Virus record (IMG/VR): IMGVR_UViG_3300041411_000178
Location: 160,005 to 224,004 of that record
Reading direction: 5' to 3' (one strand)
DNA length: 64,000 bases
The notes below the pieces were generated by a model, which did not search any database, was not told the DNA's origin, and saw only the letters and a program-made list of their open reading frames with translations. Made by a program: the position numbers and the translations under genes. Below are positions 16,638-39,087 of this stretch, piece by piece (position 1 is the first letter of the stretch; the number at the start of each line of letters is the position of its first letter).

Positions 16638-17279
16638 ATGGATAACTATAAAGACGGAACGATAGCGTTTGACCGTATTACAGTTTTGGGGAAGGACTTT
16701 GTTGCGGGGACGTACAAGGACGACTTGGCTGTCTATCAATATGCCTTTGATGTTAAGCCGTTTGTAGCAGGCGGGAAGAAAAAGAAGAAGAACGCCCCAG
16801 AGAAGTATGACTATCAATGGGAAGGCTTTTTCAACATGATGGTCAACAATACCCGCATTCGACTGCATCCGGTTCTGAATGACTACGGGTTGTTCGAGAT
16901 GGAAAGAAAGCTTGAGCTGCTCAAAGAGAAGATGCAGTTCTTTGTGAAGGAACTCAAGACACGCCGTAAGACACCTGCTAAGGGCGATCGTTACGACAAG
17001 CAGTGGCTGAACAAACCGGATACCCCTTACTCAGGGCATGTGCACCTGACCATGCACAAGGACGGCGGTGGCAACCTTTCGGTAGCCGACTGTCATAAGT
17101 CCATCCACTGGTGGGTGGACTGTTACTTAGATCCGAGTGGCAAACCCGTCTACGACGAGTACTACGAAAAGTCGTTGAAGTCGATTGAAGAGTTTGCACG
17201 TGGGTTAGGCAAGGCTTGCAAGGCAATCCAAGAATTGCGCAAGTTCTTTGCCCGTGAACTCGAAAGCTCTCAAGGTTAA
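16638..17279 (+). CDS. hypothetical protein (213 aa)
   Basis: AGGAG RBS. Confidence 0.8.
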   Translation: MDNYKDGTIAFDRITVLGKDFVAGTYKDDLAVYQYAFDVKPFVAGGKKKKKNAPEKYDYQWEGFFNMMVNNTRIRLHPVLNDYGLFEMERKLELLKEKMQFFVKELKTRRKTPAKGDRYDKQWLNKPDTPYSGHVHLTMHKDGGGNLSVADCHKSIHWWVDCYLDPSGKPVYDEYYEKSLKSIEEFARGLGKACKAIQELRKFFARELESSQG

Positions 17280-17284
17280 GAGAG

Positions 17285-17301
17285 TTTCAAACCTACATTA
17301 T
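17285..17301 (+). promoter_or_regulatory. putative early promoter motif upstream of the chaperonin
   Basis: TTTCAAACCTACATTAT. Confidence 0.65.
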
Positions 17302-17349
17302 TACCCTGAGATACATTGTTTATATCAACCCAGCTACGGAGATTCTTCC

Positions 17350-19020
17350 ATGTACATGCAACTCTCTAATAACCGCAGTCATGGTGATATGCAGGTCCGC
17401 ACTACTCAAGATGTTGTTGAGGATGTAATGACCAACGTCCATGACGCGGTGGTTGCCACCATGGGTCCTAACGGCAAGCTTTCAGCCATTACTATCGGTA
17501 CCTCGGTGAAGGTTACCAAAGACGGTGTAACAGTCGCAAAGTCGCTGAAGTTTGTTAACCCATTCGAAGAAGCTGTAAACCGCATCATTCTGGAACCGGC
17601 AATCAAGACCGATGACGAATGCGGTGACGGTACCACCACCACCATTCTGTTGACCGGTGAACTGTACAGCCTGTACTCGCAGTTCCCTACTTACCGTGAA
17701 CGCAAGTTCATCGACAAGCTGTGCAACAAAACGATCGAAGAACTCAGCCGTATGTCGATCGCTGTGAACAACGACAGTCCAGAGTTGTACAGTCTGGCCC
17801 TGACGTCCTCTAACGGCGATGAGAAGCTGGCTGACGTCATTACCGACATCTATCACCAGGCTGCCGGTAAATACCCTGAGATCGAGCTCAAGGAAGGTCT
17901 GGGCGGGCAAGACCAGGTTGTGCGTTCCAACGGTCTGCCGGTGAACCTGATCTACAGCAACCCGTCGTTCTCCAAGAACGGCAACGGTACTGCGTCGGAA
18001 TTCACGCTCTTCGTCCCAATCGTTATCGATGACAACATCCGTAACGTAGATCCGCAGGTGCTGATCGGTCTGCTGAAAAAGGTAATGGACAGCGTTGGCA
18101 GCGAAGCTACCTTCCTGCTCATTGCTCGTTCGTTCGACAACCCGATCAACAGCCTGATCCTGCAACTGAACAACCAACTGAAACGTCAGGCGTTCATCTG
18201 CGCACAGACCAACTTCGGTGGTTCGGTTGGTACGCTGTTGATGCAGGACCTCTCGATCATGCTGGGCACCAGTATGGTTAAGGTGTTCTCGGACATCGTG
18301 ACCGTCGAACCGCGTTTTTGCGTCGACAAGCTGACCATTGGTTCCACCCGGTCGGTATTCGAAGCGACTTCCCTCGAGACCACTGACCGTATTGCCGCAC
18401 AGGTGAAATCGATCGAAGAAGAACTTAACAGCTACGAGCGTGGTGAGCGTTTCAGCATGCGTGCGCGTTTCAATGAGAAACGTCTGCGTGATCTGAAGGG
18501 CGAACTGATCACCATCTTCGTGGGCGGTGAAACTCAGTCCGAGATCAAGGAACGTATCGACCGTTTCGAAGACGTGTCGAAGGCTGTCAAATCAGCACTG
18601 GTGAACGGCATCCTGCCGGGTGTAGGTACTGCACTGATCACCGCTGGTGTGTTCGCCATGCAAAGTCTGGAAGATGAAATCGATACCGATCCTGTCTACG
18701 ACAAGATCATCAAGGCTTTCATCGAAGTGATCTTTGCACAGTACACCCTCCTGATGGGTCCTCTGATGTCGTTCAAGGGTACCGCCGAAGAAAAGGCTAC
18801 ACTCATGGAAGGTGTCTTGGACATGGACAACCCTGCACCGTTCACTGTTATGAACATGCGGGATAACACCACCGGTACTCCTCGTGACCTGGGGATCTAC
18901 GACACGGCTTACGCCTCTATCACTGCATTGCGTGGTGGCATGCAGACAGCCAAGATCCTCGCCAGCCTCGATAGCATCTTGATCGGGGACAAACTGGCTG
19001 CGGTTCATATCCAGTCTTAA
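17350..19020 (+). CDS. groEL: phage GroEL-like chaperonin (556 aa)
   Basis: TMGPNG, VTKDGVTVAK, DECGDGTTTT (ATP-binding), GGETQSEIKERIDRFED and GILPGVG; start set at ATG 17350 after GGAG; no GGM tail. Confidence 0.93.
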   Translation: MYMQLSNNRSHGDMQVRTTQDVVEDVMTNVHDAVVATMGPNGKLSAITIGTSVKVTKDGVTVAKSLKFVNPFEEAVNRIILEPAIKTDDECGDGTTTTILLTGELYSLYSQFPTYRERKFIDKLCNKTIEELSRMSIAVNNDSPELYSLALTSSNGDEKLADVITDIYHQAAGKYPEIELKEGLGGQDQVVRSNGLPVNLIYSNPSFSKNGNGTASEFTLFVPIVIDDNIRNVDPQVLIGLLKKVMDSVGSEATFLLIARSFDNPINSLILQLNNQLKRQAFICAQTNFGGSVGTLLMQDLSIMLGTSMVKVFSDIVTVEPRFCVDKLTIGSTRSVFEATSLETTDRIAAQVKSIEEELNSYERGERFSMRARFNEKRLRDLKGELITIFVGGETQSEIKERIDRFEDVSKAVKSALVNGILPGVGTALITAGVFAMQSLEDEIDTDPVYDKIIKAFIEVIFAQYTLLMGPLMSFKGTAEEKATLMEGVLDMDNPAPFTVMNMRDNTTGTPRDLGIYDTAYASITALRGGMQTAKILASLDSILIGDKLAAVHIQS

Positions 19021-27413: not shown

Positions 27414-27480
27414 GCAGCTATAACTACCTCCTACCCTTTGCGGGGTAGGAGGTAGTTAGCCTGTTTCTTTATTTTTTGTT
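27412..27480. terminator. bidirectional terminator at a convergent junction
   Basis: TAACTACCTCCTACCC/GGGTAGGAGGTAGTTA stem; T-rich run on plus, TTATAGCTGCTT tail on minus. Confidence 0.75.
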
Positions 27481-27493
27481 TTAACCAATTGCA

Positions 27494-27952
27494 TTAAGCA
27501 GCCATGGCCACTGGCTTCGGTTCGGTTGGGTTATTTACAAGTCGGTGTATTGTTACACCCGCCATGATAACCTTCTTCTTCCACGGCGTAACATTGAGCA
27601 CGTCCATGGATTCTTTCAGGATGGCGTCGATCTGTTTGCGTGTTACTTTCACCTGGATAGGCTTGCCGTTTACCACCTGGATAATCTTGTAAGTCGTACA
27701 GAGCTTATCGTGCAGTGTGGTGCACTGGGTGTATTCACCGATAGGGGGAAGAAGCCACCACAACCAGCGTGGAATAGTCGCCCCATCAGTTTTGAAGTTG
27801 GTCTCCACATCTACGTAACGAGTGGAGTTCTCCTCGCCGATGTAATAACGAAACCCAGGAATGGTATCCCAGATATCCTTGTTATTAAGCACACTGGCGG
27901 TTTTATCATAACGCAGTTGTTCTTCGGCGCTGAAACGCGTGAATGTGCTCAT
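27494..27952 (-). CDS. DUF1353-family protein
   Basis: FKTDGATIPRWLW...PIGEYTQCTTLHD...RKQIDAILKESM..LNV..WK matches the DUF1353 pattern. Confidence 0.85.
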   Translation of the reverse strand: MSTFTRFSAEEQLRYDKTASVLNNKDIWDTIPGFRYYIGEENSTRYVDVETNFKTDGATIPRWLWWLLPPIGEYTQCTTLHDKLCTTYKIIQVVNGKPIQVKVTRKQIDAILKESMDVLNVTPWKKKVIMAGVTIHRLVNNPTEPKPVAMAA

Positions 27953-27963
27953 GGAGATCCTCT

Positions 27964-28689
27964 CTAGAACGGCACTGGAGTATAAGGGTGAATGTACCGG
28001 GCGTAATCACTGAACCGAATACGACCGATGTTTGAAATTGCGGCTGGAGCTACCGTACTCAGCCAGCCAAGACGGATGGTATTAAGTTTACCCATGCCCG
28101 CTTCTTTGTTAAAGCTATTTCTTGTAACCTGGTTAGCTGCACCGCCAACAATGTTCCAGTTAGTAACCTTTTGCGGAACTCCGTCTTTAAAGACAAAAAT
28201 CACACCTTGCCTACAAACTAGAGCCATGCGCTGGAGAATCCCAACTGTACTTTGTTTGGTACCAGGAATACGCCAAAAATCAGCTTCGTTTGTACCAACC
28301 CCAGCTATGTTTTGCAGCTGGCTGCCATAACCGGCGTCAGTCCAACGAGAAACCAGCCACTTACTTGCGGTGGTGCTGCATCGTATCTCGCCGTCATAAC
28401 GAGTAGCCTGGTACGCAGAACCCATACGCGACCATTCGAGTGTCCAATCGTTTGCATCCAACTCAAGAGGAGTCGGTATGGTGATCAGCATGTAACTCGT
28501 TATGGAAGGCAGTTTGGTCGTTGGGAATCCGTCAATTAAATATGTTGTGTCCACTGTCGCGCCGGAGACCGTAACCGAGGCGTTGTTATTTATTAGGTCG
28601 GTGCGTGTCTCATGGTCGAACAAAAACACACCTGGCAAATCGGGAGGTTGTTCCGCGACTTGTGTAGTCGTTAACAATGTTTCTATCAT
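27964..28689 (-). CDS. LamG/concanavalin-A-like tail-fibre-associated protein
   Basis: DWTLEW...MALVCRQGVIFVFKDG...IRFSDYARY beta-sandwich pattern; located in the tail-fibre operon. Confidence 0.7.
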   Translation of the reverse strand: MIETLLTTTQVAEQPPDLPGVFLFDHETRTDLINNNASVTVSGATVDTTYLIDGFPTTKLPSITSYMLITIPTPLELDANDWTLEWSRMGSAYQATRYDGEIRCSTTASKWLVSRWTDAGYGSQLQNIAGVGTNEADFWRIPGTKQSTVGILQRMALVCRQGVIFVFKDGVPQKVTNWNIVGGAANQVTRNSFNKEAGMGKLNTIRLGWLSTVAPAAISNIGRIRFSDYARYIHPYTPVPF

Positions 28690-28738: not shown

Positions 28739-29395
28739 TTACGCAGTAAAGAAGTCTTCTGCGGTTGGCAGGGTTGGGAGGTCTTCGATAGTCGTCGCGG
28801 CATCAGCGCCGTCTTTGACATCCCAGGTCTTCTTGTAGCCAACGGTGGAGGCAACGAACGCAGCATCAGCCACAGCTACCATCTCAGCAGCGTTGATCGA
28901 AACCACGGCGTTCTCGTAGACACGGAACTCGAAGGTCATATCGCCACCGGCCGCGATCACTTCCTTGGCAACGGTACGGAGACCGAGCAGGTTCGAGCGG
29001 TCAGTGTTACGGATCTGGACGTGGTAAATGTTCTCACCGAAGGTGTGTGGGAAACCGCGCTCGAACTGAGAGATCCGCAAGGTTTCCGCCTGGGCTTGCA
29101 GAGTTGCCTTGGCATTTGCCAGACGTTCAGCCAGCTCTACTTCGCCATAGCTGCGAGAGATCCAGGTCTGGGTCCACTCACCGTCGATTTCTTCAGGAGG
29201 CCCTTCCGAAACAACGTCGTTAACTGGAGCCGGGACTTCCTTAACGACTTCGATACCGAATTCGATCAGGGTTTCAGCATCGGTAGTAGGACCGAATGCG
29301 GTGTGTGGTGCGTATTTGGCCAGGCTGTCCATGAAGAGTGGGTACGTGCCGGACTCAGCATGGATCAGACGGGTTTGACGAGTTACTGTTGTCAT
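28739..29395 (-). CDS. DUF4376-like tail-fibre assembly protein
   Basis: N-terminal EGPPEEIDGEWTQTW; C-terminal DRSNL...FRVYEN...SINAAEMVAVA...W..KD...AATTIEDL. Confidence 0.7.
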   Translation of the reverse strand: MTTVTRQTRLIHAESGTYPLFMDSLAKYAPHTAFGPTTDAETLIEFGIEVVKEVPAPVNDVVSEGPPEEIDGEWTQTWISRSYGEVELAERLANAKATLQAQAETLRISQFERGFPHTFGENIYHVQIRNTDRSNLLGLRTVAKEVIAAGGDMTFEFRVYENAVVSINAAEMVAVADAAFVASTVGYKKTWDVKDGADAATTIEDLPTLPTAEDFFTA

Positions 29396-29404
29396 GATGA
29401 TTCC

Positions 29405-30310
29405 TTACAGAACGAGTTCGAAAAGAGGACGCCAGCCGTGGCTGGGGTGAGTCGCGGCAGTTGTCAGGCTGACGTTCAGTGCGTCAGGGTTAGTACCACT
29501 GCCGCGGTTAATACAAACGTTGTTTTGCAGATCGGTGGAGAAGGTGATCCAGCTACCATTGATCAGATCATCCACGGATTTAATCCCCAGCGCCTCTGGA
29601 AAGCTACGGATCTGGAACGCGTATGGAAGGATAAGGTCGTACTCGCCCCCAATCTGATCTGCCGCAACCGCGCTGGTGCTCGACATCACCGCACGAGACG
29701 TTGGTACCCGCATGATGAGCTGGTGATCGCCTTTATTAACTGTCTTGGCCTGTGCGATGGTACCAAAGGTAGTCTTGGCATACGGTGCCCAGTCAGCACT
29801 TGGGAAGTTACCGTAGATAACGCCCGCGCGATACAACAATTCCCAGTTAATGTTAGAGTACAGCGCCTGGCTTGCGATAAAGAGGATTTTTCCTTTATAC
29901 ACAAACTTCAGCCACCCCAAGTCAGCGGCCGTGTTCTCAGTGTTTCCCGCTACGATAGTGCCGACAAAGTTTTTGCACTCTTGAGTACTGAACAGGTCAG
30001 ACATCGGCATTTTGCCAAAGTACCCGAAGTTCCAGTCGCCCCGCAACAGCGCTTGAGGACCAGGACCGGTATAAGGCATGTAAGCCAATACCTTGTTAGG
30101 CGTCAACGCTACTTCAGTGCCCTTGCGAGAGGCCACACGATAGTAGTACACCTGGTTACGCACAGCGGTGTTATCGGTGTAGGTCAATGTCCCGCCCGGA
30201 ACTACCGCTAACGATGCAGGGAGCGCGGCGTCAGCGATAGGTGTGACTGAGCGATAGATCGTGTAATCGTCCGCCGAGTTAGGGTCGGACCAATCAATTT
30301 TGATGGGCAT
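29405..30310 (-). CDS. tail-associated paralogue 5: FN3-like N-domain plus WxPVLEL-type domain
   Basis: PGPQALLRGDWNFGYFG, WLKFVYKGKILFIA, LYRAGVIYG and GWRPLFEL; resembles the phiKZ gp131-135-type family. Confidence 0.8.
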   Translation of the reverse strand: MPIKIDWSDPNSADDYTIYRSVTPIADAALPASLAVVPGGTLTYTDNTAVRNQVYYYRVASRKGTEVALTPNKVLAYMPYTGPGPQALLRGDWNFGYFGKMPMSDLFSTQECKNFVGTIVAGNTENTAADLGWLKFVYKGKILFIASQALYSNINWELLYRAGVIYGNFPSADWAPYAKTTFGTIAQAKTVNKGDHQLIMRVPTSRAVMSSTSAVAADQIGGEYDLILPYAFQIRSFPEALGIKSVDDLINGSWITFSTDLQNNVCINRGSGTNPDALNVSLTTAATHPSHGWRPLFELVL

Positions 30311-30321
30311 TTAACCCTCCG

Positions 30322-31266
30322 TTAAGCAGGAATTAATTCAAGAACAGGGACCCAAGAAATCCAGGCCCCAGCGGCAGAACCGGTAATCGCACGACCGAAG
30401 ACGTCAGACCAGTTAGAGTTACTGACCGACATGTTGCTAGTTCCACTGAAGTGCTGAGTGGCCATTAGTGGATAAGGAACACCAGAGGCGTCGCCCCACT
30501 TGAATGGCTGTAGCAGCGGGACGTCGGCGGCCAGGATTGCGGTGGTCATGGAGCACATCAACTCACACCACTCACTGCCTTTAAAGGTTGTGCGGTCCGG
30601 AACGTTTTGATCGGTTGGCAACGTACTGTTCTTGGGGATACGAACCAAGAAGCTATCGCTACCCACAGTGACAACCTTTTTCTGGTTGACCAAGGTGTTA
30701 ATGGCAGGCTGAGCACCCACAGCGGTAAGGTTAAACGGAGCAGCCCCAGGACCGTCGACACCATAAACTAAACCGGCGTTGTAGATCTGAGACCAGGTAG
30801 CCCCACCCTGCGCTGTAAAGGGTGCGTTAGGGAAGAACAGGATCTTTCCCTTAAACACGAACTTGTACCAACCTGTCATGGTGCCATCAGCAGGCGCACC
30901 GCCAATAGATGGAGAGCCAACGGCCGCACGTAAACCGGATATGGTGAACATCTGAGCGGCAGGAATGAAGCCCATGTAACCAGCATTCCAATCACCACGT
31001 AGTACCGTGTTGTTACCGGGACCCGTTTTGGAGAAGTTGCCGTACTGCATGCACTGGCTGTATTGTGTGGTAGCTCCGGCCTTCACTGCTTCCAGCATGT
31101 AGTAACGGACGCTTCTGTCTGGGACAGTAGTGTCCGTATACGTCACATCCGAAGCACCCAGCGTTACGGTGTTAGCAGGAAGCGTGTTCCAGGTGAATGG
31201 TGAGTCTGACCAGTACAGCGTCAGGGAGTCAACAGACATTGGAGACCAATCGATTTTGATAGACAT
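30322..31266 (-). CDS. tail-associated paralogue 4
   Basis: GPGNNTVLRGDWNAGYMG, WYKFVFKGKILF, YNAGLVYG and SWVPVLEL. Confidence 0.8.
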   Translation of the reverse strand: MSIKIDWSPMSVDSLTLYWSDSPFTWNTLPANTVTLGASDVTYTDTTVPDRSVRYYMLEAVKAGATTQYSQCMQYGNFSKTGPGNNTVLRGDWNAGYMGFIPAAQMFTISGLRAAVGSPSIGGAPADGTMTGWYKFVFKGKILFFPNAPFTAQGGATWSQIYNAGLVYGVDGPGAAPFNLTAVGAQPAINTLVNQKKVVTVGSDSFLVRIPKNSTLPTDQNVPDRTTFKGSEWCELMCSMTTAILAADVPLLQPFKWGDASGVPYPLMATQHFSGTSNMSVSNSNWSDVFGRAITGSAAGAWISWVPVLELIPA

Positions 31267-31275
31267 GGAATCCCC

Positions 31276-32220
31276 TTAGACTTCAATCAGCTCCAGCACA
31301 GGCCACCAGCCGTAGTTCAGGCCGTTCCAAGTAGCGGCGTTACGGTTGGCAATGCCGGTACGGTTAGCAGCAGTGTTTCCGCGAACAAGGTTGTTGGCAG
31401 TGTTACCCGCTGCAACACGTTCTTGAACAATGCTGCCGGTGGTAACACCTGTGGACGCCATGTACAGATCTGCGACCGTGGCTTGTTGAACGTTGGCCAT
31501 ACGCTGTAGATCGGGGCAATACATGGAAAGCGGGTACGCCAGGTCGTTCCACTCATTTGGCCACAGTTCGGTTGGTTCGGTTGCGGCAGGAGTACCAGGA
31601 TAGCGGACCAAGGTGTCATCAAAGCCCGTCATGCAGCGTACACGGAACTGTTCGCCACCGATAGTTACCTTGGCACTCTGATTAACGTTAGCGCCGGCGT
31701 TGGAAGGTCCTGGACCGTCTACGCCGTATACTAACCCGAGGTCATAAAGCACTTTCCAGCTGAGACTGCCACACAGCGGGCCGTTAGGAACGTACAGAAC
31801 CTTGCCATTACGGATCCACTTATGCCAGATAGGACCTTGTTGGTTGACCACTCCAACGGTGAGACCAACTGCTGTACGAAGATCGTTGGTATTGATCAGT
31901 TCGCCAGAAGACATCGAACCGAAATAGCCGTAAGAGAAGTCACCGATCTGGATAGTAGTGGGCCCAGGGCCTTTCCGTGGTACAGCACGGATAGGGATGT
32001 TTGGAGTGCTTTGTTTGTCGGCACCCACGATGGTTTCAATCACGTAGTAATACAACGTGTCACGAACCGTAGTGGTATCGGTATAGGTGTTTTCACCCGC
32101 CGAGAGAGTGGCGATTGGGTTAGCGAGGTTAGCCCGATCGAGCGGAGCAGTCCCGCGATAGATTTTCGTTACGAACGTTCCTGGAGCACCCAGGTTAGTC
32201 CAGTTTAATACTGTATCCAT
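31276..32220 (-). CDS. tail-associated paralogue 3
   Basis: GPGPTTIQIGDFSYGYFG, WHKWIRNGKVLY, LYDLGLVYG and GWWPVLEL. Confidence 0.8.
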   Translation of the reverse strand: MDTVLNWTNLGAPGTFVTKIYRGTAPLDRANLANPIATLSAGENTYTDTTTVRDTLYYYVIETIVGADKQSTPNIPIRAVPRKGPGPTTIQIGDFSYGYFGSMSSGELINTNDLRTAVGLTVGVVNQQGPIWHKWIRNGKVLYVPNGPLCGSLSWKVLYDLGLVYGVDGPGPSNAGANVNQSAKVTIGGEQFRVRCMTGFDDTLVRYPGTPAATEPTELWPNEWNDLAYPLSMYCPDLQRMANVQQATVADLYMASTGVTTGSIVQERVAAGNTANNLVRGNTAANRTGIANRNAATWNGLNYGWWPVLELIEV

Positions 32221-32231
32221 TGTTCAATTCC

Positions 32232-33245
32232 TTAGGCGACGTATGAGCCAGTAATTGTGAATGCTTTAAGCGTTGGGCTTTCGTTTGTCCCCCTGACCCC
32301 GGCCGCTCTCATGGCCTGGCCAGAAAAGCTATACTGAACCTGAGGAAGCTGATAGGCCCAATTCTTCTGTCGTACGTTCTGCGCTCTCTGAGCGACCGTA
32401 ACGCCTGTCCATTGACGGACGTCCGTAATGACAGGGGCAAATGGACCGGGTGTTCTGTAAAGTAGTTGATAGGGATCTTTGGCTTCTGTGTCCGGAATAA
32501 GTTCTAGGACGGGTCTCCAGAAGTGTTGGTTAAAGCTGCCTGATATACGGTCAGTCTTGAGGGCGACTCGATACGCGCCCATGATCTGTCCGCTACCGCC
32601 ATCACCGCGGATGATCGTCTGGTTGACGTTAGTGGAAACCGTCTCCATTACAATCGAATCAGGACTTGAGTTAGTCCAGCCCAGAGGAGCGTAACCGAAG
32701 GTTGCAAATTTGGGAGTGATACCTCCATCTGTTGCAACACTACAACGACCTAGCAGTTGGCTCCACTCACCGGCATGAATGTTGGTACTGCCGCTGTTGG
32801 TAACGGGGTCAACATCGTAACCTTTGACCAGTCGAGGTTTGAGCACCCACAGCTTCTCTCCCTCGTACTTCGGCATCTGAATAAACTGATGCTTAGGTGT
32901 GGCGAGAGGATACTTGCCGTTATCCCGAGTGCCGTATACCAAACCAGCCGCATACAGATCCGCCCACGAAATATTGGTCCGGAAAGGTCGCTTGGCAATA
33001 TAGATGATCTTGCCATTCCAGATAAACTTTAACCAGTGGTTAGCACCCTGAGTAAGCCCGCTATTGTCATCACCCTGGTACAGCCCGGCAGCACCTGCTA
33101 CTTGAGAAATGCCAAACAACTGTGTGTCTGTTACTTCGCCAAAGTAACCCAAGGTCTCATCACCGCCAATCAGCGCCTTAGGACCAGGCCCTGAGTTGTT
33201 GATGTAAATCGTTTTACCCCCCGTAGAGAGTAGTGCTTCATTCAT
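32232..33245 (-). CDS. tail-associated paralogue 2
   Basis: Start moved to ATG 33245 (MNEALLST) after GAGGTG, paralleling MNEAMLAT of the upstream gene; PGPKALIGGDETLGYFG...FWRPVLEL. Confidence 0.8.
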   Translation of the reverse strand: MNEALLSTGGKTIYINNSGPGPKALIGGDETLGYFGEVTDTQLFGISQVAGAAGLYQGDDNSGLTQGANHWLKFIWNGKIIYIAKRPFRTNISWADLYAAGLVYGTRDNGKYPLATPKHQFIQMPKYEGEKLWVLKPRLVKGYDVDPVTNSGSTNIHAGEWSQLLGRCSVATDGGITPKFATFGYAPLGWTNSSPDSIVMETVSTNVNQTIIRGDGGSGQIMGAYRVALKTDRISGSFNQHFWRPVLELIPDTEAKDPYQLLYRTPGPFAPVITDVRQWTGVTVAQRAQNVRQKNWAYQLPQVQYSFSGQAMRAAGVRGTNESPTLKAFTITGSYVA

Positions 33246-33257
33246 AACGTTCACCTC

Positions 33258-33285
33258 TGGCATACAAACCTCCCCGGAGGGAGGT
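33258..33285 (-). terminator. intra-operon hairpin with a TTGTATGCC tail
   Basis: Minus strand ACCTCCC-TCCG-GGGAGGT then TTGTATGCCAG. Confidence 0.5.
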
Positions 33286-33300
33286 GAGTATGTTTAACAG

Positions 33301-34560
33301 TTAAGGTGCTGGTCCGATAAGCTCTAGTACCGGTCTCCAGCCGTAGCCACCGTGTGTGGATCCCGGAGCCTGATACCAAAGTCCGTTGAAGCCAGGATAC
33401 CCGCGAGTCAATGGTCCGTTACCAGCCCAGTGTTCTTGGCAAAGTGTGAGCTCGCCGTTACCAGTACTGTTGTTCCAATAAACATCTGCGTTGCTGTAGT
33501 TGGCCCACCGATCATTAGCCGAGCCCTGATAGTTAACGGTCACACGAGCAAAGTACGCATCGTATTCACCGCCAGCAGCGCTCGCTGGATCCGGACCGTT
33601 ACCGCCCGTCATGAGACGGACCTTATAAAGGTTCCCGGCGATCTCGATGGTCTTGGTGCCTTTAGCAGCACCCATGGCATCGAGCGTCTCCCACAACACG
33701 GCTGTGCGCATTGGCTTCATCGCGATGTAGAACGTTTTACCGTTATCAATAAACTTCAACCAGCTTGGATTATCGTCTGGCGGTGTAATGCCGGTGATAC
33801 CCAGTTCTGTTGCTAAAGCGTTGGCCGTGATGAGATCCGCACCTGCTACCTCACCTTTAAACGGACTCGGTGGAATGCTGGACTTCTTAACCAGCATCGG
33901 TCTCCAGCCGTAATACGTTTGCGGGTTGTTAGCCGGCATGTTCCAGATACCCATGATCGGGTGGTTACCGCTGGAGTTCTGCCAGTCGTTGCCGCGCAAG
34001 CAAAAACCGTTGGCGAGCTGCTCTGCACAGATGGTAAAAACACCATCACTCAGGTCAGTACCGCCAGGAGCACCAAGACCCAGCATTGTCCGGGTGTAAT
34101 CACCCCAGATAGGTGCTGACTCGATACCTACACGATCCGTGTTGTCGTATATCGCATACATGTAACGGTTCCAGTTACCGCCGGCGTTTGAAGGCACAGA
34201 GGAACCTGAAGGAGAGATTGCACCGGTCATTAACTGACAGATGTAAACTTCGCCTTGAATCGTTACTTCTTTTGCACCACCATTGGTAGCAGCGGCAATG
34301 GCTTCGTAAGTGGTGGCGTAACGAATAGGCTTCTTAGCAATGTACAGCTCAAGCCCACTCTCTTCAATGAAATGTAACCAACCACCGTCGACGTTCATTG
34401 GAGCGCCGGTGTCCAGTCCAACCAGTCCAGCCAGCGTATCCCCGTAAGTAAAGTCTGCCGACTTCGTTATTCCTTTAAACGGAGTCCCCTCTGGGAAAGG
34501 GATGTCAGAGTTGTCATTGGCTCCTGTCTTATATGCCGTTGCAAGCATCGCTTCATTCAT
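33301..34560 (-). CDS. tail-associated paralogue 1 (two tandem WRP-type domains)
   Basis: Two copies of P-F-KG...WLxFI...YIAxKPxR...YxxxLMTG...GWRP(M/V)L. Confidence 0.8.
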   Translation of the reverse strand: MNEAMLATAYKTGANDNSDIPFPEGTPFKGITKSADFTYGDTLAGLVGLDTGAPMNVDGGWLHFIEESGLELYIAKKPIRYATTYEAIAAATNGGAKEVTIQGEVYICQLMTGAISPSGSSVPSNAGGNWNRYMYAIYDNTDRVGIESAPIWGDYTRTMLGLGAPGGTDLSDGVFTICAEQLANGFCLRGNDWQNSSGNHPIMGIWNMPANNPQTYYGWRPMLVKKSSIPPSPFKGEVAGADLITANALATELGITGITPPDDNPSWLKFIDNGKTFYIAMKPMRTAVLWETLDAMGAAKGTKTIEIAGNLYKVRLMTGGNGPDPASAAGGEYDAYFARVTVNYQGSANDRWANYSNADVYWNNSTGNGELTLCQEHWAGNGPLTRGYPGFNGLWYQAPGSTHGGYGWRPVLELIGPAP

Positions 34561-34576
34561 TTCACGATCCTTTAAT

Positions 34577-34620
34577 GAAAAAGTAACACAAGGAACCTCC
34601 CCGAAAGGAGGCCCCTGTGT
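34577..34620 (-). terminator. intrinsic terminator/attenuator after the tail-fibre gene
   Basis: Minus strand CACAGGGGCCTCC-TTTCG-GGGAGGTTCCTTGTG then TTACTTTTTC. Confidence 0.6.
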
Positions 34621-34627
34621 TCAGCGG

Positions 34628-37600
34628 TTAAGGTACTACCGCACCCGAAGCGCCAACCCACTCAACACCGTCCCAGAAGAACGTGAGGATGGTACGGCTA
34701 CCGGTCAGGCTTGGAGGAGCACCTGTGTTCCAGACCAGCACAGTAGCGCCAGTTGGAGCAAAGGTGATTGCCCCGGCAGCACCGTTGACTTTCACCACCA
34801 GGGTTTGAGCCCGAGCCGGAGCTTTAGGACCATCACCGAGGGTAATCGTCTTGGCGGTTGCACCAGTGTTGTTGACAATCAATGTACCAGTGGTCAGTGG
34901 ATCTACCGAGCCCGTAGCTGCGAGTGTCTGAATCGACAGATCGTAGCGGTTGAACTCGATCCACTGCGTGCCTTTGTAAACGTACGTTTTACCGTCGTTC
35001 GCAGGACCCGAGATGCCAGGAGTAGGTGCGGTGTAAACCACCCACGTCTTGTCACCTTTACGCAGGTACAGGTTGGTGTCCGCTGGGACATCAGCAAAAC
35101 CAGGTACGAATGCAGTGATCTGCGCCTGGATCTTGCCGAAGGCCGTGAGGACCGTGTCAGCAGCAGTGATAGCACCACCGGTGGCAAAGCTGATACCCGC
35201 CAGCGGAGTAGACCGTGTACGAGCCGGAGTGTAGTAGAGGTTGGTAGTCCCTTCCACCACCGCATCGGTAGTACCCGGGGAGGCTACCAGACCAACGTAA
35301 ACAGTACCCGACCAGCGGAACTGAGCATTGGTTGCGAGGGAGATGTAGATCTTCCCTGCTTCACCAGTTGCTGGGAAAGCCGCTTGGTTAGCAAACTCCA
35401 CCACGTCATCAACGTAGCTCGGCAGTTGACCTGCCGGAACGGTACCGTTAACCAGCGTTGCAACCGTCTGGCCCAGTGCTGCGAGAGGAACACCACCCAG
35501 GCTACCGATCGTAGGGGCATTGTACGCACCCCAGGAACCGACGTCCTGACCGTTGAGACGCACACGCATGTACGGCTGGTTGTCAGCAGGTGGTTCGTCG
35601 AACTGAGGAGGAAACTCCAGCTCTACCCACTCGCCTTCGTTGGTTTCGCTACCTTCAACCAGTTGGCGAACGTAAACCTTACCAGCAATCATGGCAGGGG
35701 CTTCATCAACCGGCAGCATGACCCACTCGTTGCCGAGACGGACTACTTTACCAGCAGACAGTTCTGGCGAGTTAACATCACCCGCAACCAGTTGACCCCA
35801 GTACACCCAACCCGACACAGCCGACTTGTAGTAAACCTTGAAGCTGTCGGAAACAGCCCAGTCACCCACGTTACCGGTAAAGCCAGCGCTTGGAGCATCC
35901 ACACCAGCAGGCAGAGTAATCCAGGACGAACCTTTCTCACCCTTGTCACCTTTCTTGCCGATACCGACAGGACCAGGAACACCCTGGATACCCTGAGGAC
36001 CGCGAACCAGACCGATGTCGATCCACTCACCGCCGTTAGCGGTAGTCCAGATGGCCAGGTTGTTACCAACCAGATAACCATCACCCAGCGAACCGGTAGG
36101 GACCGCAGTTTCCAGCGCAGCCAGCGTTGGGTAAGCACCCAGGATGTTGATCGAGGTACCTGCTTCACCCTTCTCACCATCGTTACCCTGAGGACCAGGC
36201 AGACCCGTGATGTCGTACGGACCATCCCACTCACCATCGGTCAAGACATACAGCATCTTGTCGTTGGAAGTGAACCAGCCGTCGCCTTCTTCAGAGTTAG
36301 CCGGCAGAGGCAGATAGGTAGGGCCTGCAACAGTACCACGCAGCTTCAGACCGATACCTTGGATACCACGCTCACCAGGAGCGCCCACTGGACCGCAATC
36401 GACCCACACGCCGCCCAGAGAGATCTGGAGGTGCTTGTCCAGGTCAACGTAGGCTTTACCGCCGTTGAGGAGTGGATCAGGTACGTTGGCATCTTCAGCG
36501 GTCAGGATCTTGATGATCGTGATCGAGGAACCGTTGGCGCCCGGAGCACCGTCGCTACCGTCTTCACCTTTGAACTGACCCAGATTCACCCATGCAGCAC
36601 CGATGTGGGCATACAGAGTGTTGGTATCACGGACAGCGTAGACGTCCTGTTCTTCCGGAGAGGCCGGCAGGGAGCCGTAAGTGGATACCGAACCCTTGAT
36701 GATGATGTTGGTACCGTTAGTACCGTTGGTACCTACCAGGCTGGAAAGGAACTCGAGTTCCGAACCACTGTGGCCGTTATCCAGCCAGAGCTGGTAAGTC
36801 GATTGACCACGGAAAGGACCCACGTCCACCCAAACAGCATCAGTGAGGATGTGCAGGTGACCGTCGTCAGCAGTGACGTAACCGTCTTGCTCTTCTGGGT
36901 TTTGGATATTGCCCAGTTGAGGAGCGTTAGCCACGGTGCCTTTAACGGTGAGGTTCTTACCACGAGGACCTTCAGGACCTGGCACAGTGGACTTCAACGA
37001 AAGCAACCACTGTTGCAGGGTGCCGCCGTAGCCGTCTTCAACAGCCAGATCGTAAGCCGACAGACCACCTACCGAGCCGAGGTCAACGTATTGCTCAGCG
37101 TCAGTCACCCAAACGTACAGGTGGCTACCGACGTACCAGGCTTCAGTTGCAACACCTGGGGTTGGCAGCAGCGCTTCGGTATCTTTGGCACCCATCACTT
37201 CGAAAGGCGAACGAGGAGGACCTTCAGGACCTGGGTCACCAGGAGTGGTCGACTTCAGGGAAGCAACGAACTCGGCTTCAGTACCGGTGTTACCGATGTT
37301 CAGCCAGGATTGATAAGCGGACTTACCTACCAGGCTGGCCAGCCATTGTGCCTGAGTACCCGCGAAGCCGTCAGCCTGAGCAACCTGGAACGCCGACTTA
37401 CCTTCTGGACCTTCCAGACCAATCGAACTCCAGACTGGATCAGCATCAGGATCGCTACCGTCACCACCCGGTACCAGCAACCAAAGGTCGCTCTTCCAGA
37501 TATACGCGTCACCGATCGATACAGCGTTAACCGGAGGAAGTGCTTGTGCATCGGGCCAGGTACCCAAAAGGGTCACACCGCGGTCGCCCAACAGGGAACC

Positions 37601-38377
37601 CGAGTCGGACCAATCCACACCGTTCCAGACACGCAGGGAGCCGGTCACGAAGTAAGCGGTACCTTCAGCCAGGCCTTCGGTAGGAATAGCGTCCAGTTCG
37701 GCTTGGCTGTTCAGCGTACCGATAACCTTAACCGAACCCACAGAACCGGCAGCGCCTTTAAGGCTCAGCAGGAAGTCCGCCTCGGTACCGGTGTTACCCT
37801 GATCCAACCAGATCTGGTAAGTGCTCTTGCCGACCAGGCTGGTCAGCCACTGGGATTGGTTACCCTGGAAACCACCGTCTTGAGCGATTTCGAAAGCCGA
37901 CTTGCCCGCATCGCCTTTCAGGCCGATGGTGACCCAGCCGTCAGGCTGAGGGATGAGCAGCCAGATGTCGCTCTTCCAGATGTAGGCATCACCCACTTCA
38001 TTCAGCGTGTGATCCGGGAGCGGCTGGTTATCGGGCCAGGTGCCGAGCAGGGTAATACCCCGTGGACCCAGCAGTAGACCAGAGCTGATCCATTCGGTCA
38101 GGTTCCAGACAACCAGCGAACCTTCAACGAAGTAGGCGTCGCCTTTGGCGAGGTCTTCAGTTGGCAGTGCGTCCAGATCGGTCTGGGAAATGTTGCCGAT
38201 CACATTCAGACCGCCAACTACCAGAGCCTGGAATTGATCGAGCAGATAACGGGTACGGTTCGCCAGCAGAATTGCTGCACGGTTATCCGGACCATCCGGA
38301 CCACCACGGACCGGTTCCCCTGTTTCAATAAGGGGGATGTCTTCGGGAAATTCACTTACTTCTTCAATGTTAGCCAT
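34628..38377 (-). CDS. long tail fibre protein with collagen-like G-X-Y stretches (1249 aa)
   Basis: N-terminal ETGEPVRGGPDG...LANRTRYL attachment-type motif; many GPxGxxG runs; repeated GKSAYQxWL and LP...GDAY...W modules; PxDxxxYxR motifs near the C-terminus. Confidence 0.88.
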   Translation of the reverse strand: MANIEEVSEFPEDIPLIETGEPVRGGPDGPDNRAAILLANRTRYLLDQFQALVVGGLNVIGNISQTDLDALPTEDLAKGDAYFVEGSLVVWNLTEWISSGLLLGPRGITLLGTWPDNQPLPDHTLNEVGDAYIWKSDIWLLIPQPDGWVTIGLKGDAGKSAFEIAQDGGFQGNQSQWLTSLVGKSTYQIWLDQGNTGTEADFLLSLKGAAGSVGSVKVIGTLNSQAELDAIPTEGLAEGTAYFVTGSLRVWNGVDWSDSGSLLGDRGVTLLGTWPDAQALPPVNAVSIGDAYIWKSDLWLLVPGGDGSDPDADPVWSSIGLEGPEGKSAFQVAQADGFAGTQAQWLASLVGKSAYQSWLNIGNTGTEAEFVASLKSTTPGDPGPEGPPRSPFEVMGAKDTEALLPTPGVATEAWYVGSHLYVWVTDAEQYVDLGSVGGLSAYDLAVEDGYGGTLQQWLLSLKSTVPGPEGPRGKNLTVKGTVANAPQLGNIQNPEEQDGYVTADDGHLHILTDAVWVDVGPFRGQSTYQLWLDNGHSGSELEFLSSLVGTNGTNGTNIIIKGSVSTYGSLPASPEEQDVYAVRDTNTLYAHIGAAWVNLGQFKGEDGSDGAPGANGSSITIIKILTAEDANVPDPLLNGGKAYVDLDKHLQISLGGVWVDCGPVGAPGERGIQGIGLKLRGTVAGPTYLPLPANSEEGDGWFTSNDKMLYVLTDGEWDGPYDITGLPGPQGNDGEKGEAGTSINILGAYPTLAALETAVPTGSLGDGYLVGNNLAIWTTANGGEWIDIGLVRGPQGIQGVPGPVGIGKKGDKGEKGSSWITLPAGVDAPSAGFTGNVGDWAVSDSFKVYYKSAVSGWVYWGQLVAGDVNSPELSAGKVVRLGNEWVMLPVDEAPAMIAGKVYVRQLVEGSETNEGEWVELEFPPQFDEPPADNQPYMRVRLNGQDVGSWGAYNAPTIGSLGGVPLAALGQTVATLVNGTVPAGQLPSYVDDVVEFANQAAFPATGEAGKIYISLATNAQFRWSGTVYVGLVASPGTTDAVVEGTTNLYYTPARTRSTPLAGISFATGGAITAADTVLTAFGKIQAQITAFVPGFADVPADTNLYLRKGDKTWVVYTAPTPGISGPANDGKTYVYKGTQWIEFNRYDLSIQTLAATGSVDPLTTGTLIVNNTGATAKTITLGDGPKAPARAQTLVVKVNGAAGAITFAPTGATVLVWNTGAPPSLTGSRTILTFFWDGVEWVGASGAVVP

Positions 38378-38416: not shown

Positions 38417-39004
38417 TTACTGGTAGGTAAGAGTCCCATCGTGCAGATACGTGCCGTCGTGGATAGCGTCGGTGATAACACCACCGTTGCTTTCAACAAT
38501 CGTCAGCGTACCTACAACGGTGTGTGAATCGATGGTGGCCAAGGTCACCTGTTGGTCAATCGTGATTTCTTCATCAACCAGCACGTACTTGCAGCTGTTC
38601 TTGATGATTTGCAACACTGTTTCGGCGTTTTTGGAACCCTTACTCACCAAAACTGCCCCCGACACACTATCACCCTCTCCTGACAGAAGGTAAATGCCCT
38701 GTACCGTTTTTGCCTGAAGATCAGCAAGGGCCAGCGGGGTGGGTTCAATGAGGTTGGCCGGTCCGTTGGCAGTGTAGTCGGCCGGCTGATACTTCTGGTC
38801 GACTCCCGTGAAAAGGGCTGGTGAATCAACATCGACCAGGTAGGTGATGACGCCCGCATTGTCCGCTTTGCGGAAATTCGAGAAAGTGACTTGGCCGAGG
38901 GTCAGGGCGGTGAGTGCATTTACGAAGGTCGGTTCATCCTTATAGCGGTCTTGGTTATAAGCGATAAACCTGTCCAAAAACAGTTGTTCGTTTGGAGAGG
39001 CCAT
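38417..39004 (-). CDS. virion structural protein heading the tail-fibre operon
   Basis: ATG 39004 (MASPNEQ); paralogue of 19352-19948; C-terminal HDGTYLHDGTLTYQ. Confidence 0.75.
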   Translation of the reverse strand: MASPNEQLFLDRFIAYNQDRYKDEPTFVNALTALTLGQVTFSNFRKADNAGVITYLVDVDSPALFTGVDQKYQPADYTANGPANLIEPTPLALADLQAKTVQGIYLLSGEGDSVSGAVLVSKGSKNAETVLQIIKNSCKYVLVDEEITIDQQVTLATIDSHTVVGTLTIVESNGGVITDAIHDGTYLHDGTLTYQ

Positions 39005-39087
39005 ATTTAGTTCCACAGTAGGGTCAGGGGGCTTGGAGCATAAAATTGCAAAATAAGATAGTCAGTGTGATTTCATTTATAATAAAA

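What the first reader, a model, noticed from the sequence alone, without database searches (positions are those of the whole stretch)
29405..34560. Array of five paralogues (six domains) with a C-type-lectin-like terminal motif and hypervariable tips: duplication-based receptor-binding repertoire
Seen: five consecutive genes share PGP...GD...GYFG, WLKF...GKI(L/I)(F/Y), LYxAGLVYG and a terminal RG...(G/S/F)W(R/W/V)P(V/M/L)(L/F)EL motif. The sequence between RG and W-x-P differs completely in every copy (e.g. RGNTAANRTGIANRNAATWNGLNY, RGYPGFNGLWYQAPGSTHGGY, RGSGTNPDALNVSLTTAATHPSH). Three copies have an N-terminal FN3-like domain and one has two tandem domains. Established: CLec/FGE-type folds end in an RG...G(F/W)R signature, and the intervening segment is the ligand-binding variable region in DGR targets such as Mtd; phiKZ has a related tail paralogue cluster (gp131-135). 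Inference: a multi-specificity adhesin set diversified by duplication rather than by retroelement.
Basis: partly seen in the sequence, partly recalled or inferred. Interest (0 to 1): 0.62.

Follow-up and report, generated by a model that had tools for sequence, protein, structure and literature searches.

The report
Lectin-like virion protein cassette, jumbo phage
Five neighbouring genes of a 224-kb phiKZ-like jumbo phage encode six copies of a divergent C-type-lectin-like domain; they belong to a known but unexplained family of virion proteins, sit behind a fibre gene as an ancient fixed-order cassette, and most likely bind host surface molecules without any retroelement diversifying them.

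Summary
Five adjacent minus-strand genes (29405-34560) encode six copies of one roughly 220-residue domain. Three copies carry an N-terminal FN3 domain and one protein has two tandem copies. The loop before the conserved W-x-P-V-L-E-L strand cannot be aligned between paralogues.

An AlphaFold2 model of the domain (pLDDT 92.8) matches almost only C-type-lectin/FGE-fold structures, including Lcl, TvpA, PvdO and Mtd. The scores are modest (Z 4-7). The genome has no reverse transcriptase and no template repeat, so this is not a DGR.

The repertoire reading needs correction:
- Genes B-C-D-E form an ancient four-slot cassette kept in fixed order in about 18 related jumbo phages, including the cultured phage Noxifer.
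- Each slot forms its own clade on the tree.
- Relatives multiply whole cassettes rather than single genes.
- The tips are the fastest-evolving segment, but they are 72-79% identical among close relatives (57% in slot B), so they are not hypervariable.

The family is the "paralog family B" of Salmonella phage SPN3US, not phiKZ gp131-135. SPN3US proteomics places that family on tailless particles, which conflicts with the tail-fibre gene context seen here.

Best reading: non-redundant, fibre-associated lectin-like binding subunits on the virion surface. This is a new member of a known kind, with a fold assignment I did not find in the papers searched.

The parts
38417..39016 (-). 199-aa protein ('up199') at the head of the fibre operon; candidate anchor or adaptor domain
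   Evidence: It matches phrog_21620 positions 1-187, and that same PHROG matches the lectin-like domains at positions 192-389. It is homologous to the N-terminal 155-186 residues of RisingSun gp197 and gp201, which are the first genes of that phage's cassettes. It is syntenic upstream of the fibre gene in relatives. It shows no profile similarity to DUF7941.
34628..38377 (-). 1249-aa fibre protein with collagen-like G-X-Y runs and internal repeats
   Evidence: It matches phrog_3904 'tail fiber protein' with E 1.4e-164. Its N-terminal 55 residues resemble BcepMu-type tail-fibre N-termini, and its repeat module resembles phiKZ gp146. Its Noxifer counterpart, NOXIFER_138, is annotated as a putative tail fibre.
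33301..34560 (-). Gene A: two tandem lectin-like domains (residues 28-223 and 216-415); variable loops at 33907-33990 and 33340-33399
   Evidence: HMM domain calls. It is 60% identical to the N-terminal part of NOXIFER_78. In relatives this slot carries extra C-terminal modules: a 696-aa Kelch beta-propeller form in L003, and 666-751 aa forms in L012, L015, L027 and L030. L006 and L007 lack the gene altogether.
32232..33263 (-). Gene B (slot 1): lectin-like domain without FN3, plus an 87-aa C-terminal extension; variable loop at 32520-32603
   Evidence: The slot-1 clade has support 98. The extension is conserved in close relatives at 48-71% identity.
31276..32220 (-). Gene C (slot 2): FN3 plus lectin-like domain; loop at 31309-31377 with a conserved RG..R..G..R pattern
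   Evidence: The slot-2 clade has support 100. R280, G281 and R287 are invariant across 20 orthologues.
30322..31266 (-). Gene D (slot 3): FN3 plus lectin-like domain; loop at 30355-30426, with no RG motif
   Evidence: The slot-3 clade has support 89.
29405..30310 (-). Gene E (slot 4): FN3 (residues 1-77) plus lectin-like domain (78-301); loop at 29435-29500
   Evidence: AlphaFold2 models have pLDDT 91.2 for the full protein and 92.8 for the domain alone. The slot-4 clade has support 99.
28739..29395 (-). 218-aa DUF4376 protein, 9 bp downstream of E
   Evidence: It matches Pfam PF14301 with E 2.4e-10. It is syntenic in about 30 related loci, placed either before or after the cassette.
27964..28689 (-). 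241-aa protein homologous to the C-terminus of long A-type proteins in relatives
   Evidence: BLASTP aligns it to L029 and L031 (674-aa proteins, residues 512-674) and to L038 (1346-aa protein, residues 952-1166), each of which starts with tandem lectin-like domains.
27494..27952 (-). 152-aa DUF1353 protein, in a PHROG annotated as tail assembly chaperone; last gene of the operon
   Evidence: It matches phrog_1158 with E 1.1e-33. PF07087 is recorded for its orthologues.
27421..27458 (.). 17-bp-stem hairpin between convergent genes; likely terminator of the operon

Best explanation
The array is the lectin-like part of a virion-surface fibre module of a phiKZ-like jumbo phage.

Anatomy. Each protein carries a divergent C-type-lectin/FGE-type domain. 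Its conserved framework runs from the N-terminal PGP..GD..GYFG strand, through W.KF..GK, to the C-terminal W-x-P-V-L-E-L strand. This framework holds a fast-evolving, indel-rich loop. By position, that loop corresponds to the C-terminal, ligand-binding part of Mtd-type lectin domains.

Organisation. Genes B, C, D and E are four non-redundant orthologous subunits. They are tightly spaced (9-11 bp gaps), so I infer that they are made in similar amounts from one transcript. I also infer that they assemble together onto the product of the upstream fibre gene or onto an adaptor such as the 199-aa protein. In that position they would give the virion several different low-affinity binding sites for host surface glycans or proteins during first, reversible adsorption. 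Gene A, a tandem-domain protein, occupies a more exchangeable slot; in relatives it carries other distal binding modules such as Kelch propellers.

Evolution. Diversity arises by slow divergence, by swapping the A module, and by duplicating whole cassettes. It does not arise by mutagenic retrohoming.

Shown: paralogy, predicted fold, absence of a DGR, cassette conservation, slot orthology, synteny with fibre genes, and virion presence of homologues in other phages. Inferred: ligand binding, hetero-assembly, and attachment to the fibre rather than to the head.
For: Fold:
- The domain model has pLDDT 92.8.
- All 50 best matches among 48,161 PDB representatives have the C-type-lectin/FGE fold: Lcl C-terminal domain Z 7.1, TvpA 6.2, PvdO 6.2, Bd2740 6.1, Mtd 5.6, TaqVP 4.6, and many animal lectin domains.
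- Foldseek's own top hits are TvpA, EgtB, CarF and PvdO. A re-alignment of Foldseek's candidates gives the same list.

No DGR.

Cassette:
- The fixed B-C-D-E order recurs in about 18 related 220-320 kb phages and in cultured Noxifer (genes 136 to 133, behind putative tail fibre gene 138).
- An 80-domain tree splits into four 20-member slot clades with support 98, 100, 89 and 99.
- Whole cassettes are duplicated in L013, L019, L026, RisingSun and SPN3US.

Links by domain fusion:
- The stand-alone 199-aa protein is fused to the first cassette protein in RisingSun.
- The stand-alone 241-aa protein is fused to A-type proteins in L029, L031 and L038.

Tail context in small phages: the domain sits directly after tail-fibre or tail-tip genes in L045, L048 and Clostridium phage phi8074-B1 (gp17).

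Virion presence: the GenBank record notes 201phi2-1 gp452 and gp456 as detected by mass spectrometry. RisingSun gp196, gp200 and gp204 were detected in a crude lysate. The SPN3US family was detected in purified particles.

Loop evolution: across 20 orthologues the loop is 15-31% identical against 40-51% for the rest of the domain, while the following strand is 64-87% identical.
Against: - Fold scores are modest (best Z 7.1; Foldseek E 0.038 or worse) and rest on a predicted model. No sequence-level link to any lectin or FGE family was found.
- SPN3US proteomics found the homologous family in tailless particles and assigned it to the head or neck. phiKZ gp83 is annotated as a head protein.
- In A-type proteins the lectin-like domains are N-terminal, which is where fibre proteins usually anchor rather than bind.
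- Polar residues conserved across all paralogues (R13, K58, Q110, R124, E146 and D171 of the domain) could mark a shared partner site rather than diverse ligands.
- No ligand, host or binding datum exists for any member.
Confidence: 0.5

Rival explanations
1. Head or neck decoration. The proteins sit on the capsid or neck surface, as FN3/Ig-bearing decoration proteins such as Hoc do, and bind environmental or host glycans from there. They are not part of a tail fibre.
For: SPN3US paralog family B (gp138-154) includes the lectin-like cassettes gp145-153. It was detected in purified tailless 64_112(am27) particles and assigned to the head or neck. phiKZ gp83 is annotated as a structural head protein. 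FN3 domains are present in C, D and E.
Against: Here, in Noxifer, and in three small phages, the genes lie directly behind tail-fibre or tail-tip genes and next to a DUF1353 protein that matches a PHROG annotated as tail assembly chaperone. The first gene of each SPN3US cassette starts with a DUF7941 N-terminal domain. The Goslar preprint places that family at the peripheral baseplate, and phiKZ gp127 of that family is modelled in the baseplate map.
Confidence: 0.25
2. Structural or assembly role without ligand binding. The domain is a building block or chaperone of the fibre or filament apparatus, and the variable loop simply tolerates change.
For: The four slots are fixed and non-redundant. 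dN/dS is 0.15 or less wherever dS could be estimated. Slot C has a conserved loop motif. In long A-type proteins the domains are N-terminal, with other distal modules such as Kelch at the C-terminus. Genes directly downstream of fibre genes often encode assembly factors (general phage knowledge).
Against: Homologues are present in mature particles or lysates at appreciable levels. The fold is typically a binding scaffold in phage and bacterial surface proteins such as Mtd, TvpA, Lcl, invasin and Bd2740. Separate chaperone-like proteins (DUF4376, DUF1353) are already encoded in the operon.
Confidence: 0.15
3. A DGR-type variable protein set whose retroelement lies elsewhere or has been lost.
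For: The fold matches include the DGR targets TvpA, Mtd and TaqVP. Five of the six copies have an RG...W-x-P pattern at the C-terminus.
Against: The genome is complete (direct terminal repeats, 100% completeness estimate) and has no RVT_1 match at E <= 1. A word-size-7 blastn of the array against the whole genome finds no second copy of any tip. Tips are 72-79% identical among relatives in slots C-E, and the differences include indels rather than adenine-site substitutions.
Confidence: 0.02
4. FGE-like enzymes (formylglycine-generating or sulfoxide-synthase type).
For: FGE, EgtB, SenA and PvdO are among the fold matches.
Against: No Cys or His is among the invariant or nearly invariant columns of the 60-sequence domain alignment. 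No Pfam FGE-sulfatase match appears even at E <= 1. The proteins are virion components.
Confidence: 0.02

Closest known systems
SPN3US 'Paralog family B' (gp83, gp138-154, gp161, gp237; Thomas et al. 2016, PMC5105663; 2017, PMC5694885), together with the 'virion structural proteins' of Noxifer, RisingSun, 201phi2-1 (gp452, gp456) and PhiPA3
   Same: The domain family is the same. The profile hits SPN3US gp145-153 with E down to 5e-41, Noxifer genes 133-136, 78 and 79, RisingSun gp196-204, and 201phi2-1 gp452 and gp456. The cassette logic of three or four genes is also the same.
   Different: The window has a single four-gene cassette plus a tandem-domain gene. Its first cassette protein lacks the DUF7941 N-terminal domain seen in SPN3US and the up199-like N-terminal domain seen in RisingSun. 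The published work gives no fold or function and assigns the family to the head.
Bordetella phage BPP-1 Mtd and other DGR variable proteins (TvpA, TaqVP)
   Same: The predicted C-type-lectin/FGE-type fold matches: Mtd Z 5.6-5.8 over 114 residues spanning its whole lectin domain, and TvpA Z 6.2 over 146 residues. The variable segment lies near the C-terminus, ahead of a conserved final strand.
   Different: There is no reverse transcriptase, no template repeat and no adenine-directed variation. There is no sequence similarity. Diversity comes from paralogy and cassette duplication. Mtd's homotrimeric assembly was not tested here.
DUF7941 'fiber cloud' proteins of Chimalliviridae (Goslar preprint, doi 10.64898/2026.04.21.720040)
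   Same: In SPN3US the two families are adjacent, and in SPN3US gp145 they are fused: DUF7941 N-terminal domain at residues 1-150, then the lectin-like domain. A 472-aa ESM Atlas cluster carrying DUF7941 matches the model with TM 0.78. A host-recognition role has been proposed for the DUF7941 proteins.
   Different: The lectin-like domain is not DUF7941 (hhalign probability 1.3%). The window's genome shows no DUF7941 match at all.
phiKZ gp131-135 tail-fibre paralogues
   Same: Only the idea is shared: a cluster of paralogous fibre-associated genes.
   Different: They are not homologous. The profile search of phiKZ hits only gp83. gp131 has a helical N-terminus and a seven-bladed propeller.
Legionella Lcl C-terminal domain and Bdellovibrio Bd2740 fibre tip
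   Same: These are among the best structural matches (Z 7.1 and 6.1). From my own recall, both are lectin-like adhesin tips on fibrous or collagen-like stalks. Here a collagen-like fibre is encoded directly upstream.
   Different: In those proteins the lectin domain is fused to the stalk. Here the lectin-like proteins are separate polypeptides, and no association with the fibre has been shown.

Membership tests
C-type-lectin-like / FGE-type fold superfamily | Alpha/beta lectin-like fold spanning the whole domain, with the N- and C-terminal ends both matched | tested here: met
   All 50 best of 48,161 PDB representatives have this fold, with Z 4.0-7.1 and alignments spanning model residues about 1-224. 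The same picture comes from Foldseek's candidates. The scores are modest and the query is a predicted model.
C-type-lectin-like / FGE-type fold superfamily | Detectable sequence homology to a curated lectin_C or FGE-sulfatase family | tested here: not met
   No such Pfam hit at E <= 1. Profile searches of PDB sequences found nothing relevant.
Canonical Ca2+-dependent carbohydrate-recognition domain | EPN/QPD and WND calcium and sugar-binding motifs in the long-loop region, plus conserved disulfides | not testable with these tools
   Model coordinates and residue-level structural alignments were not available. No cysteine is conserved in the domain alignment, so the canonical disulfides are absent.
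Diversity-generating retroelement target (Mtd/TvpA type) | A reverse transcriptase encoded in the same genome | tested here: not met
   No PF00078 match at E <= 1 in the complete 224-kb genome. The control genomes did give matches.
Diversity-generating retroelement target (Mtd/TvpA type) | A template repeat nearly identical to the variable region, differing at adenines | tested here: not met
   A blastn with word size 7 of the array against the whole genome gave only the self-hit and chance-level matches of 57 bases or fewer.
SPN3US paralog family B / jumbo-phage 'virion structural protein' family (phrog_1062, 3589, 16120, 21620) | Significant sequence similarity to the family's members | tested here: met
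   PHROG E-values range from 1e-9 to 1e-128. The domain profile hits SPN3US gp145-153, Noxifer, RisingSun and 201phi2-1 members.
SPN3US paralog family B / jumbo-phage 'virion structural protein' family | Presence of the protein in virions | not testable with these tools
   This is shown only for homologues: 201phi2-1 gp452 and gp456 (record annotation), RisingSun gp196, gp200 and gp204 in a lysate, and SPN3US. The window comes from an uncultured metagenomic virus.
phiKZ gp131-135 paralogue family | Homology to the gp131-type N-terminal segment or the beta-propeller | tested here: not met
   The profile search of the phiKZ genome hits only gp83. The gp131 architecture is described.
DUF7941 (PF25613) | Match to the Pfam model or to a profile of SPN3US members | tested here: not met
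   No Pfam hit. No hit in the phage's own genome. hhalign probability is 1.3%.
Fibronectin type III domain (N-termini of C, D and E) | FN3 beta-sandwich fold | tested here: met
   Residues 1-78 of E match many FN3 structures with Z 8-10 and rmsd 1.7-2.5. C and D align with this region but were not folded.

The most novel reading that the evidence does not exclude
B, C, D and E are obligate subunits of one hetero-oligomeric lectin-like adhesin. This would be a pseudo-symmetric complex in which ancient paralogues replace the identical chains of an Mtd-like homo-oligomer. Jumbo phages would then widen or switch host recognition by duplicating or exchanging the whole cassette, which would be a retroelement-free, cassette-based way of diversifying C-type-lectin receptor binders. 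It would also give a function to the largest unexplained paralogue family of chimallivirus virions.
Probability: 0.2. Interest if true: 0.65.

Novelty: new member of a known kind. Interest (0 to 1): 0.45.

Why it matters
phiKZ-like jumbo phages are candidates for phage therapy, and how they recognise hosts is poorly understood. The family described here makes up 9 of the 20 members of SPN3US's unexplained paralog family B.

A published genomic survey reported no C-type-lectin (FGE-type) domains in jumbo phages (PMC7824862). Assigning this family a lectin-like fold, and showing that it comes as fixed three- or four-gene cassettes linked to fibre genes and to DUF7941 filament proteins, turns an unknown family into a testable hypothesis. 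The cultured phages Noxifer, RisingSun and SPN3US all offer systems for adsorption, localisation and deletion tests.

The array also shows that a lectin-fold binder of the kind DGRs diversify can be diversified without a retroelement.

Tried and rejected
- Co-folding of C, D and E with per-slot alignments (complex prediction) scored 0.01 against a mark of 0.32. The tool returned no verdict, so this is not evidence either way.
- Megablast of the array against GenBank phages found nothing. Relatives were reachable only at the protein level.
- Pfam gave no hit for any of the five proteins. Profile searches of PDB sequences gave only chance hits.
- Foldseek and VIA searches with the full-length E model returned only FN3 matches. 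The lectin-like domain had to be folded alone.
- dN/dS was uninformative about positive selection. dS is saturated among the available relatives (undefined for all of slot B and much of slot D) and dN/dS is 0.15 or less where it could be estimated.
- The idea that up199 is a divergent DUF7941 N-terminal domain was rejected (hhalign probability 0.4%). The idea that DUF7941 and the lectin-like domain are homologous was also rejected.
- The fibre proteins of small phages L045 and L048 show no significant pairwise similarity to the window's fibre. Only the gene order is shared.
- DUF6273 was suggested by the Atlas searches, with a feature score of 0.82 and structural TM of about 0.6. It gave no hit in the phage's own genome.
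- The DGR and FGE-enzyme readings were rejected; see the rival explanations.
- The costly representative-protein search, the sequencing-run search and read mapping were not used. The family scans and word search had already placed the protein.

Full report
**What is there.** The window is the last 64 kb of a complete 224,004-bp virus record with direct terminal repeats. The finding covers five adjacent minus-strand genes:

| Gene | Coordinates | Length |
|---|---|---|
| A | 33301-34560 | 419 aa |
| B | 32232-33263 | 343 aa |
| C | 31276-32220 | 314 aa |
| D | 30322-31266 | 314 aa |
| E | 29405-30310 | 301 aa |

- They align with each other at 16-31% identity.
- A profile of the six domains finds exactly six copies in the genome, all in this array, with E 1e-58 to 1e-129.
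- HMM domain calls give two tandem domains in A and one each in B-E.
- C, D and E begin with a ~78-residue domain. In the model of E it is an FN3 sandwich, with Z 8-10 against many FN3 structures.
- B has no FN3 domain but has an 87-residue C-terminal extension.
Copy D lacks the RG.

**Fold.**
- Pfam finds nothing in the five proteins. PHROGs place them in families 1062, 3589, 16120 and 21620, annotated "virion structural protein" or unknown.
- A word search gave 57 homologues of E.
- With those homologues, AlphaFold2 modelled E at pLDDT 91.2. The domain alone (E residues 78-301, 60-row alignment) reached pLDDT 92.8 and pTM 0.90.
- Against 48,161 PDB representatives, all 50 best matches have the C-type-lectin/FGE fold. 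These include Legionella Lcl C-terminal domain (Z 7.1, 116 residues), TvpA (6.2), PvdO (6.2), Bdellovibrio Bd2740 tip (6.1), Mtd (5.6; model 7-224 against Mtd 173-379), CarF, SenA, EgtB, TaqVP, invasin-family adhesins and dozens of animal lectin domains.
- Foldseek's own best hits are TvpA, EgtB, CarF and PvdO, at weak E-values of 0.04-0.5. Re-aligning Foldseek's candidates gives the same families, including all five Mtd variants at Z 5.6-5.8.
- Individually the scores are modest, and there is no sequence-level link to these families. The uniformity of the list makes a divergent lectin-like fold the clear reading.
- No Cys or His is conserved in the domain alignment, which argues against an FGE-type enzyme.

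**No retroelement.** The complete genome has no RVT_1 match at E <= 1. A sensitive blastn of the array against the whole genome finds no second copy of any tip. The paralogues themselves barely align at the DNA level, which shows that the duplications are old.

**The array is an ancient fixed-order cassette.**
- Related loci were fetched from assemblies and IMG/VR and scanned with the domain HMM.
- The order [quoted passage not shown] recurs in about 18 related 220-320 kb phages.
- It also recurs in cultured Pseudomonas phage Noxifer, as genes 136 to 133, downstream of putative tail fibre gene 138.
- A tree of 80 domains splits into four clades of exactly 20, one per slot, with support 98, 100, 89 and 99.
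- Phages with more copies have whole extra cassettes:

| Phage or locus | Cassettes |
|---|---|
| L013, L019 | 2 x 4 genes |
| L026 | 2 x 3 genes |
| Erwinia phage RisingSun | 2 x 4 genes (gp197-204) |
| Salmonella phage SPN3US | 3 x 3 genes (gp145-153) |

- In the window the gaps between B, C, D, E and the next gene are 9-11 bp, each with a Shine-Dalgarno-like motif.
- Gene A's slot is the changeable one. It is 417-419 aa here and in L010 and L011. It is 696 aa with a Kelch propeller in L003, and 666-751 aa in L012, L015, L027 and L030. L006 and L007 lack the gene.
- The copies are therefore non-redundant slots, which suggests a hetero-assembly. A co-folding test of C, D and E returned no verdict and counts for nothing.

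**How variable are the tips?**

| Comparison | Tip identity | Rest of the lectin domain | Following strand |
|---|---|---|---|
| Six closest phages, slots C, D, E | 72-79% | 77-83% | 93-96% |
| Six closest phages, slot B | 57% | 73% | 100% |
| 20 orthologues per slot | 15-31%, with indels | 40-51% | 64-87% |

- dN in the tips is 1.2-1.9 times that of the rest of the domain. dN/dS is 0.15 or less wherever dS is not saturated.
- Slot C keeps an RG..R..G..R pattern, with R280, G281 and R287 invariant.
- In E, two other patches (about residues 111-130 and 231-250) vary as much as the tip.
- The tip is therefore the fastest-evolving, indel-tolerant loop on a conserved frame, as expected for a binding loop. 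It is not hypervariable.

**Context.**
- The operon on the minus strand reads: 199-aa protein, 1249-aa fibre (phrog_3904 "tail fiber protein", E 1e-164), A, B, C, D, E, DUF4376 protein, 241-aa protein, DUF1353 protein (phrog_1158 "tail assembly chaperone"). It ends at a 17-bp-stem hairpin at 27421-27458.
- Two domain fusions tie the flanking genes to the lectin-like proteins. The 199-aa protein is homologous to the N-terminus of RisingSun's first cassette proteins (gp197, gp201) and to positions 1-187 of phrog_21620, whose positions 192-389 match the lectin-like domain. The 241-aa protein is homologous to the C-terminus of long A-type proteins in L029, L031 and L038.
- In three small phages the same domain is encoded directly behind tail-fibre or tail-tip genes. 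These are L045 (after baseplate wedge and tail fibre genes), L048 (after tape measure, a tail/adsorption protein and tail fibre genes, and just upstream of the lysis genes), and Clostridium phage phi8074-B1 gp17 (after the tape measure and tail proteins).

**What is known about the family.**
- The profile hits SPN3US gp145-153. These genes belong to the "Paralog family B" of Thomas and colleagues, which has 20 members (gp83, gp138-154, gp161, gp237).
- The family was detected in purified tailless particles and was therefore assigned to the head or neck. Its function is unknown (PMC5105663, PMC5694885).
- SPN3US gp138-144 are full DUF7941 proteins. SPN3US gp145 is a DUF7941 N-terminal domain followed by the lectin-like domain.
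[quoted passage not shown] It suggests they are anchored at the peripheral baseplate and carry carbohydrate-binding domains. phiKZ gp127, one of them, is modelled in the phiKZ baseplate.
- The lectin-like domain itself is not DUF7941.
- The GenBank record notes 201phi2-1 gp452 and gp456 as virion proteins detected by mass spectrometry. RisingSun gp196, gp200 and gp204 were detected in a lysate.
- BFVD holds 33 clear structural relatives. Every one that carries an organism name comes from a phiKZ-like jumbo phage.
Only the N-terminus of gp83 matches.
- A 2021 survey stated that no C-type-lectin (FGE-type) domains were found in jumbo phages. I found no earlier statement of the fold assignment in the papers I searched.

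**Verdict.**
- Most likely (about 0.5), these are virion-surface, fibre-associated, lectin-like binding subunits. Four are non-redundant cassette proteins and one is a tandem-domain protein in an exchangeable slot. They would serve first contact with the host envelope.
- The main rival (about 0.25) keeps the binding role but places the proteins on the head or neck, as the SPN3US proteomics suggests. A purely structural or assembly role (about 0.15) is not excluded. The DGR and enzyme readings are rejected.
- The window's array is a new member of a known but unexplained family. What this analysis adds is the fold, the cassette and slot structure, and the links to the fibre and DUF7941 modules.
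- Interest is moderate (0.45). It is not a new kind of system, but it makes an open question about jumbo-phage virions directly testable in cultured phages.

Noticed in passing
window 17248-19020 (+): A 590-aa GroEL-like chaperonin gene (phrog_5725, E 1.7e-121). From my own recall, a phage-encoded GroEL is known from Pseudomonas phage EL.
   Followed up: no
window 27421-27458; 34591-34616; 33268-33285: There is a 17-bp-stem hairpin between the convergent DUF1353 gene and a plus-strand ORF. It is probably a bidirectional terminator. Smaller hairpins lie just after the fibre gene and between A and B. They may tune expression of the fibre, A, and the tightly spaced B-E block.
   Followed up: partly
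window 34502-38077 (+) and 29021-30211 (+): Very long antisense ORFs (1191 aa and 396 aa) overlap the fibre gene and gene E. They have no support, and I took them as artefacts of the GC-rich, repeat-rich coding strand.
   Followed up: partly
L045:8485-9642; L048:8917-10173; L055 (phi8074-B1 gp17):6806-9484: The same lectin-like domain occurs in 39-48 kb phages, directly behind tail-fibre or tail-tip genes. One of them is a Clostridium siphophage. The family is therefore not restricted to jumbo phages.
   Followed up: partly
L054 (SPN3US 115393-133154): SPN3US gp138-144 are full-length DUF7941 proteins. gp145 and gp154 (both scanned) have a DUF7941 N-terminal domain followed by another domain; in gp145 that second domain is the lectin-like one. 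The published 'paralog family B' therefore joins two structurally different modules through these fusion proteins.
   Followed up: partly
window 34628-38377 (-): The fibre protein has internal repeats of about 95 residues (residues 54-147 against 213-307, 63% identical) and several collagen-like G-X-Y runs. Its first 55 residues resemble BcepMu-type tail-fibre N-termini.
   Followed up: partly
L003:12854-14194; L009:10750-12087; L011:11694-13106: Close relatives carry a second tandem-domain (A-type) gene of about 445-470 aa downstream of the DUF1353 gene. The window lacks it.
   Followed up: no
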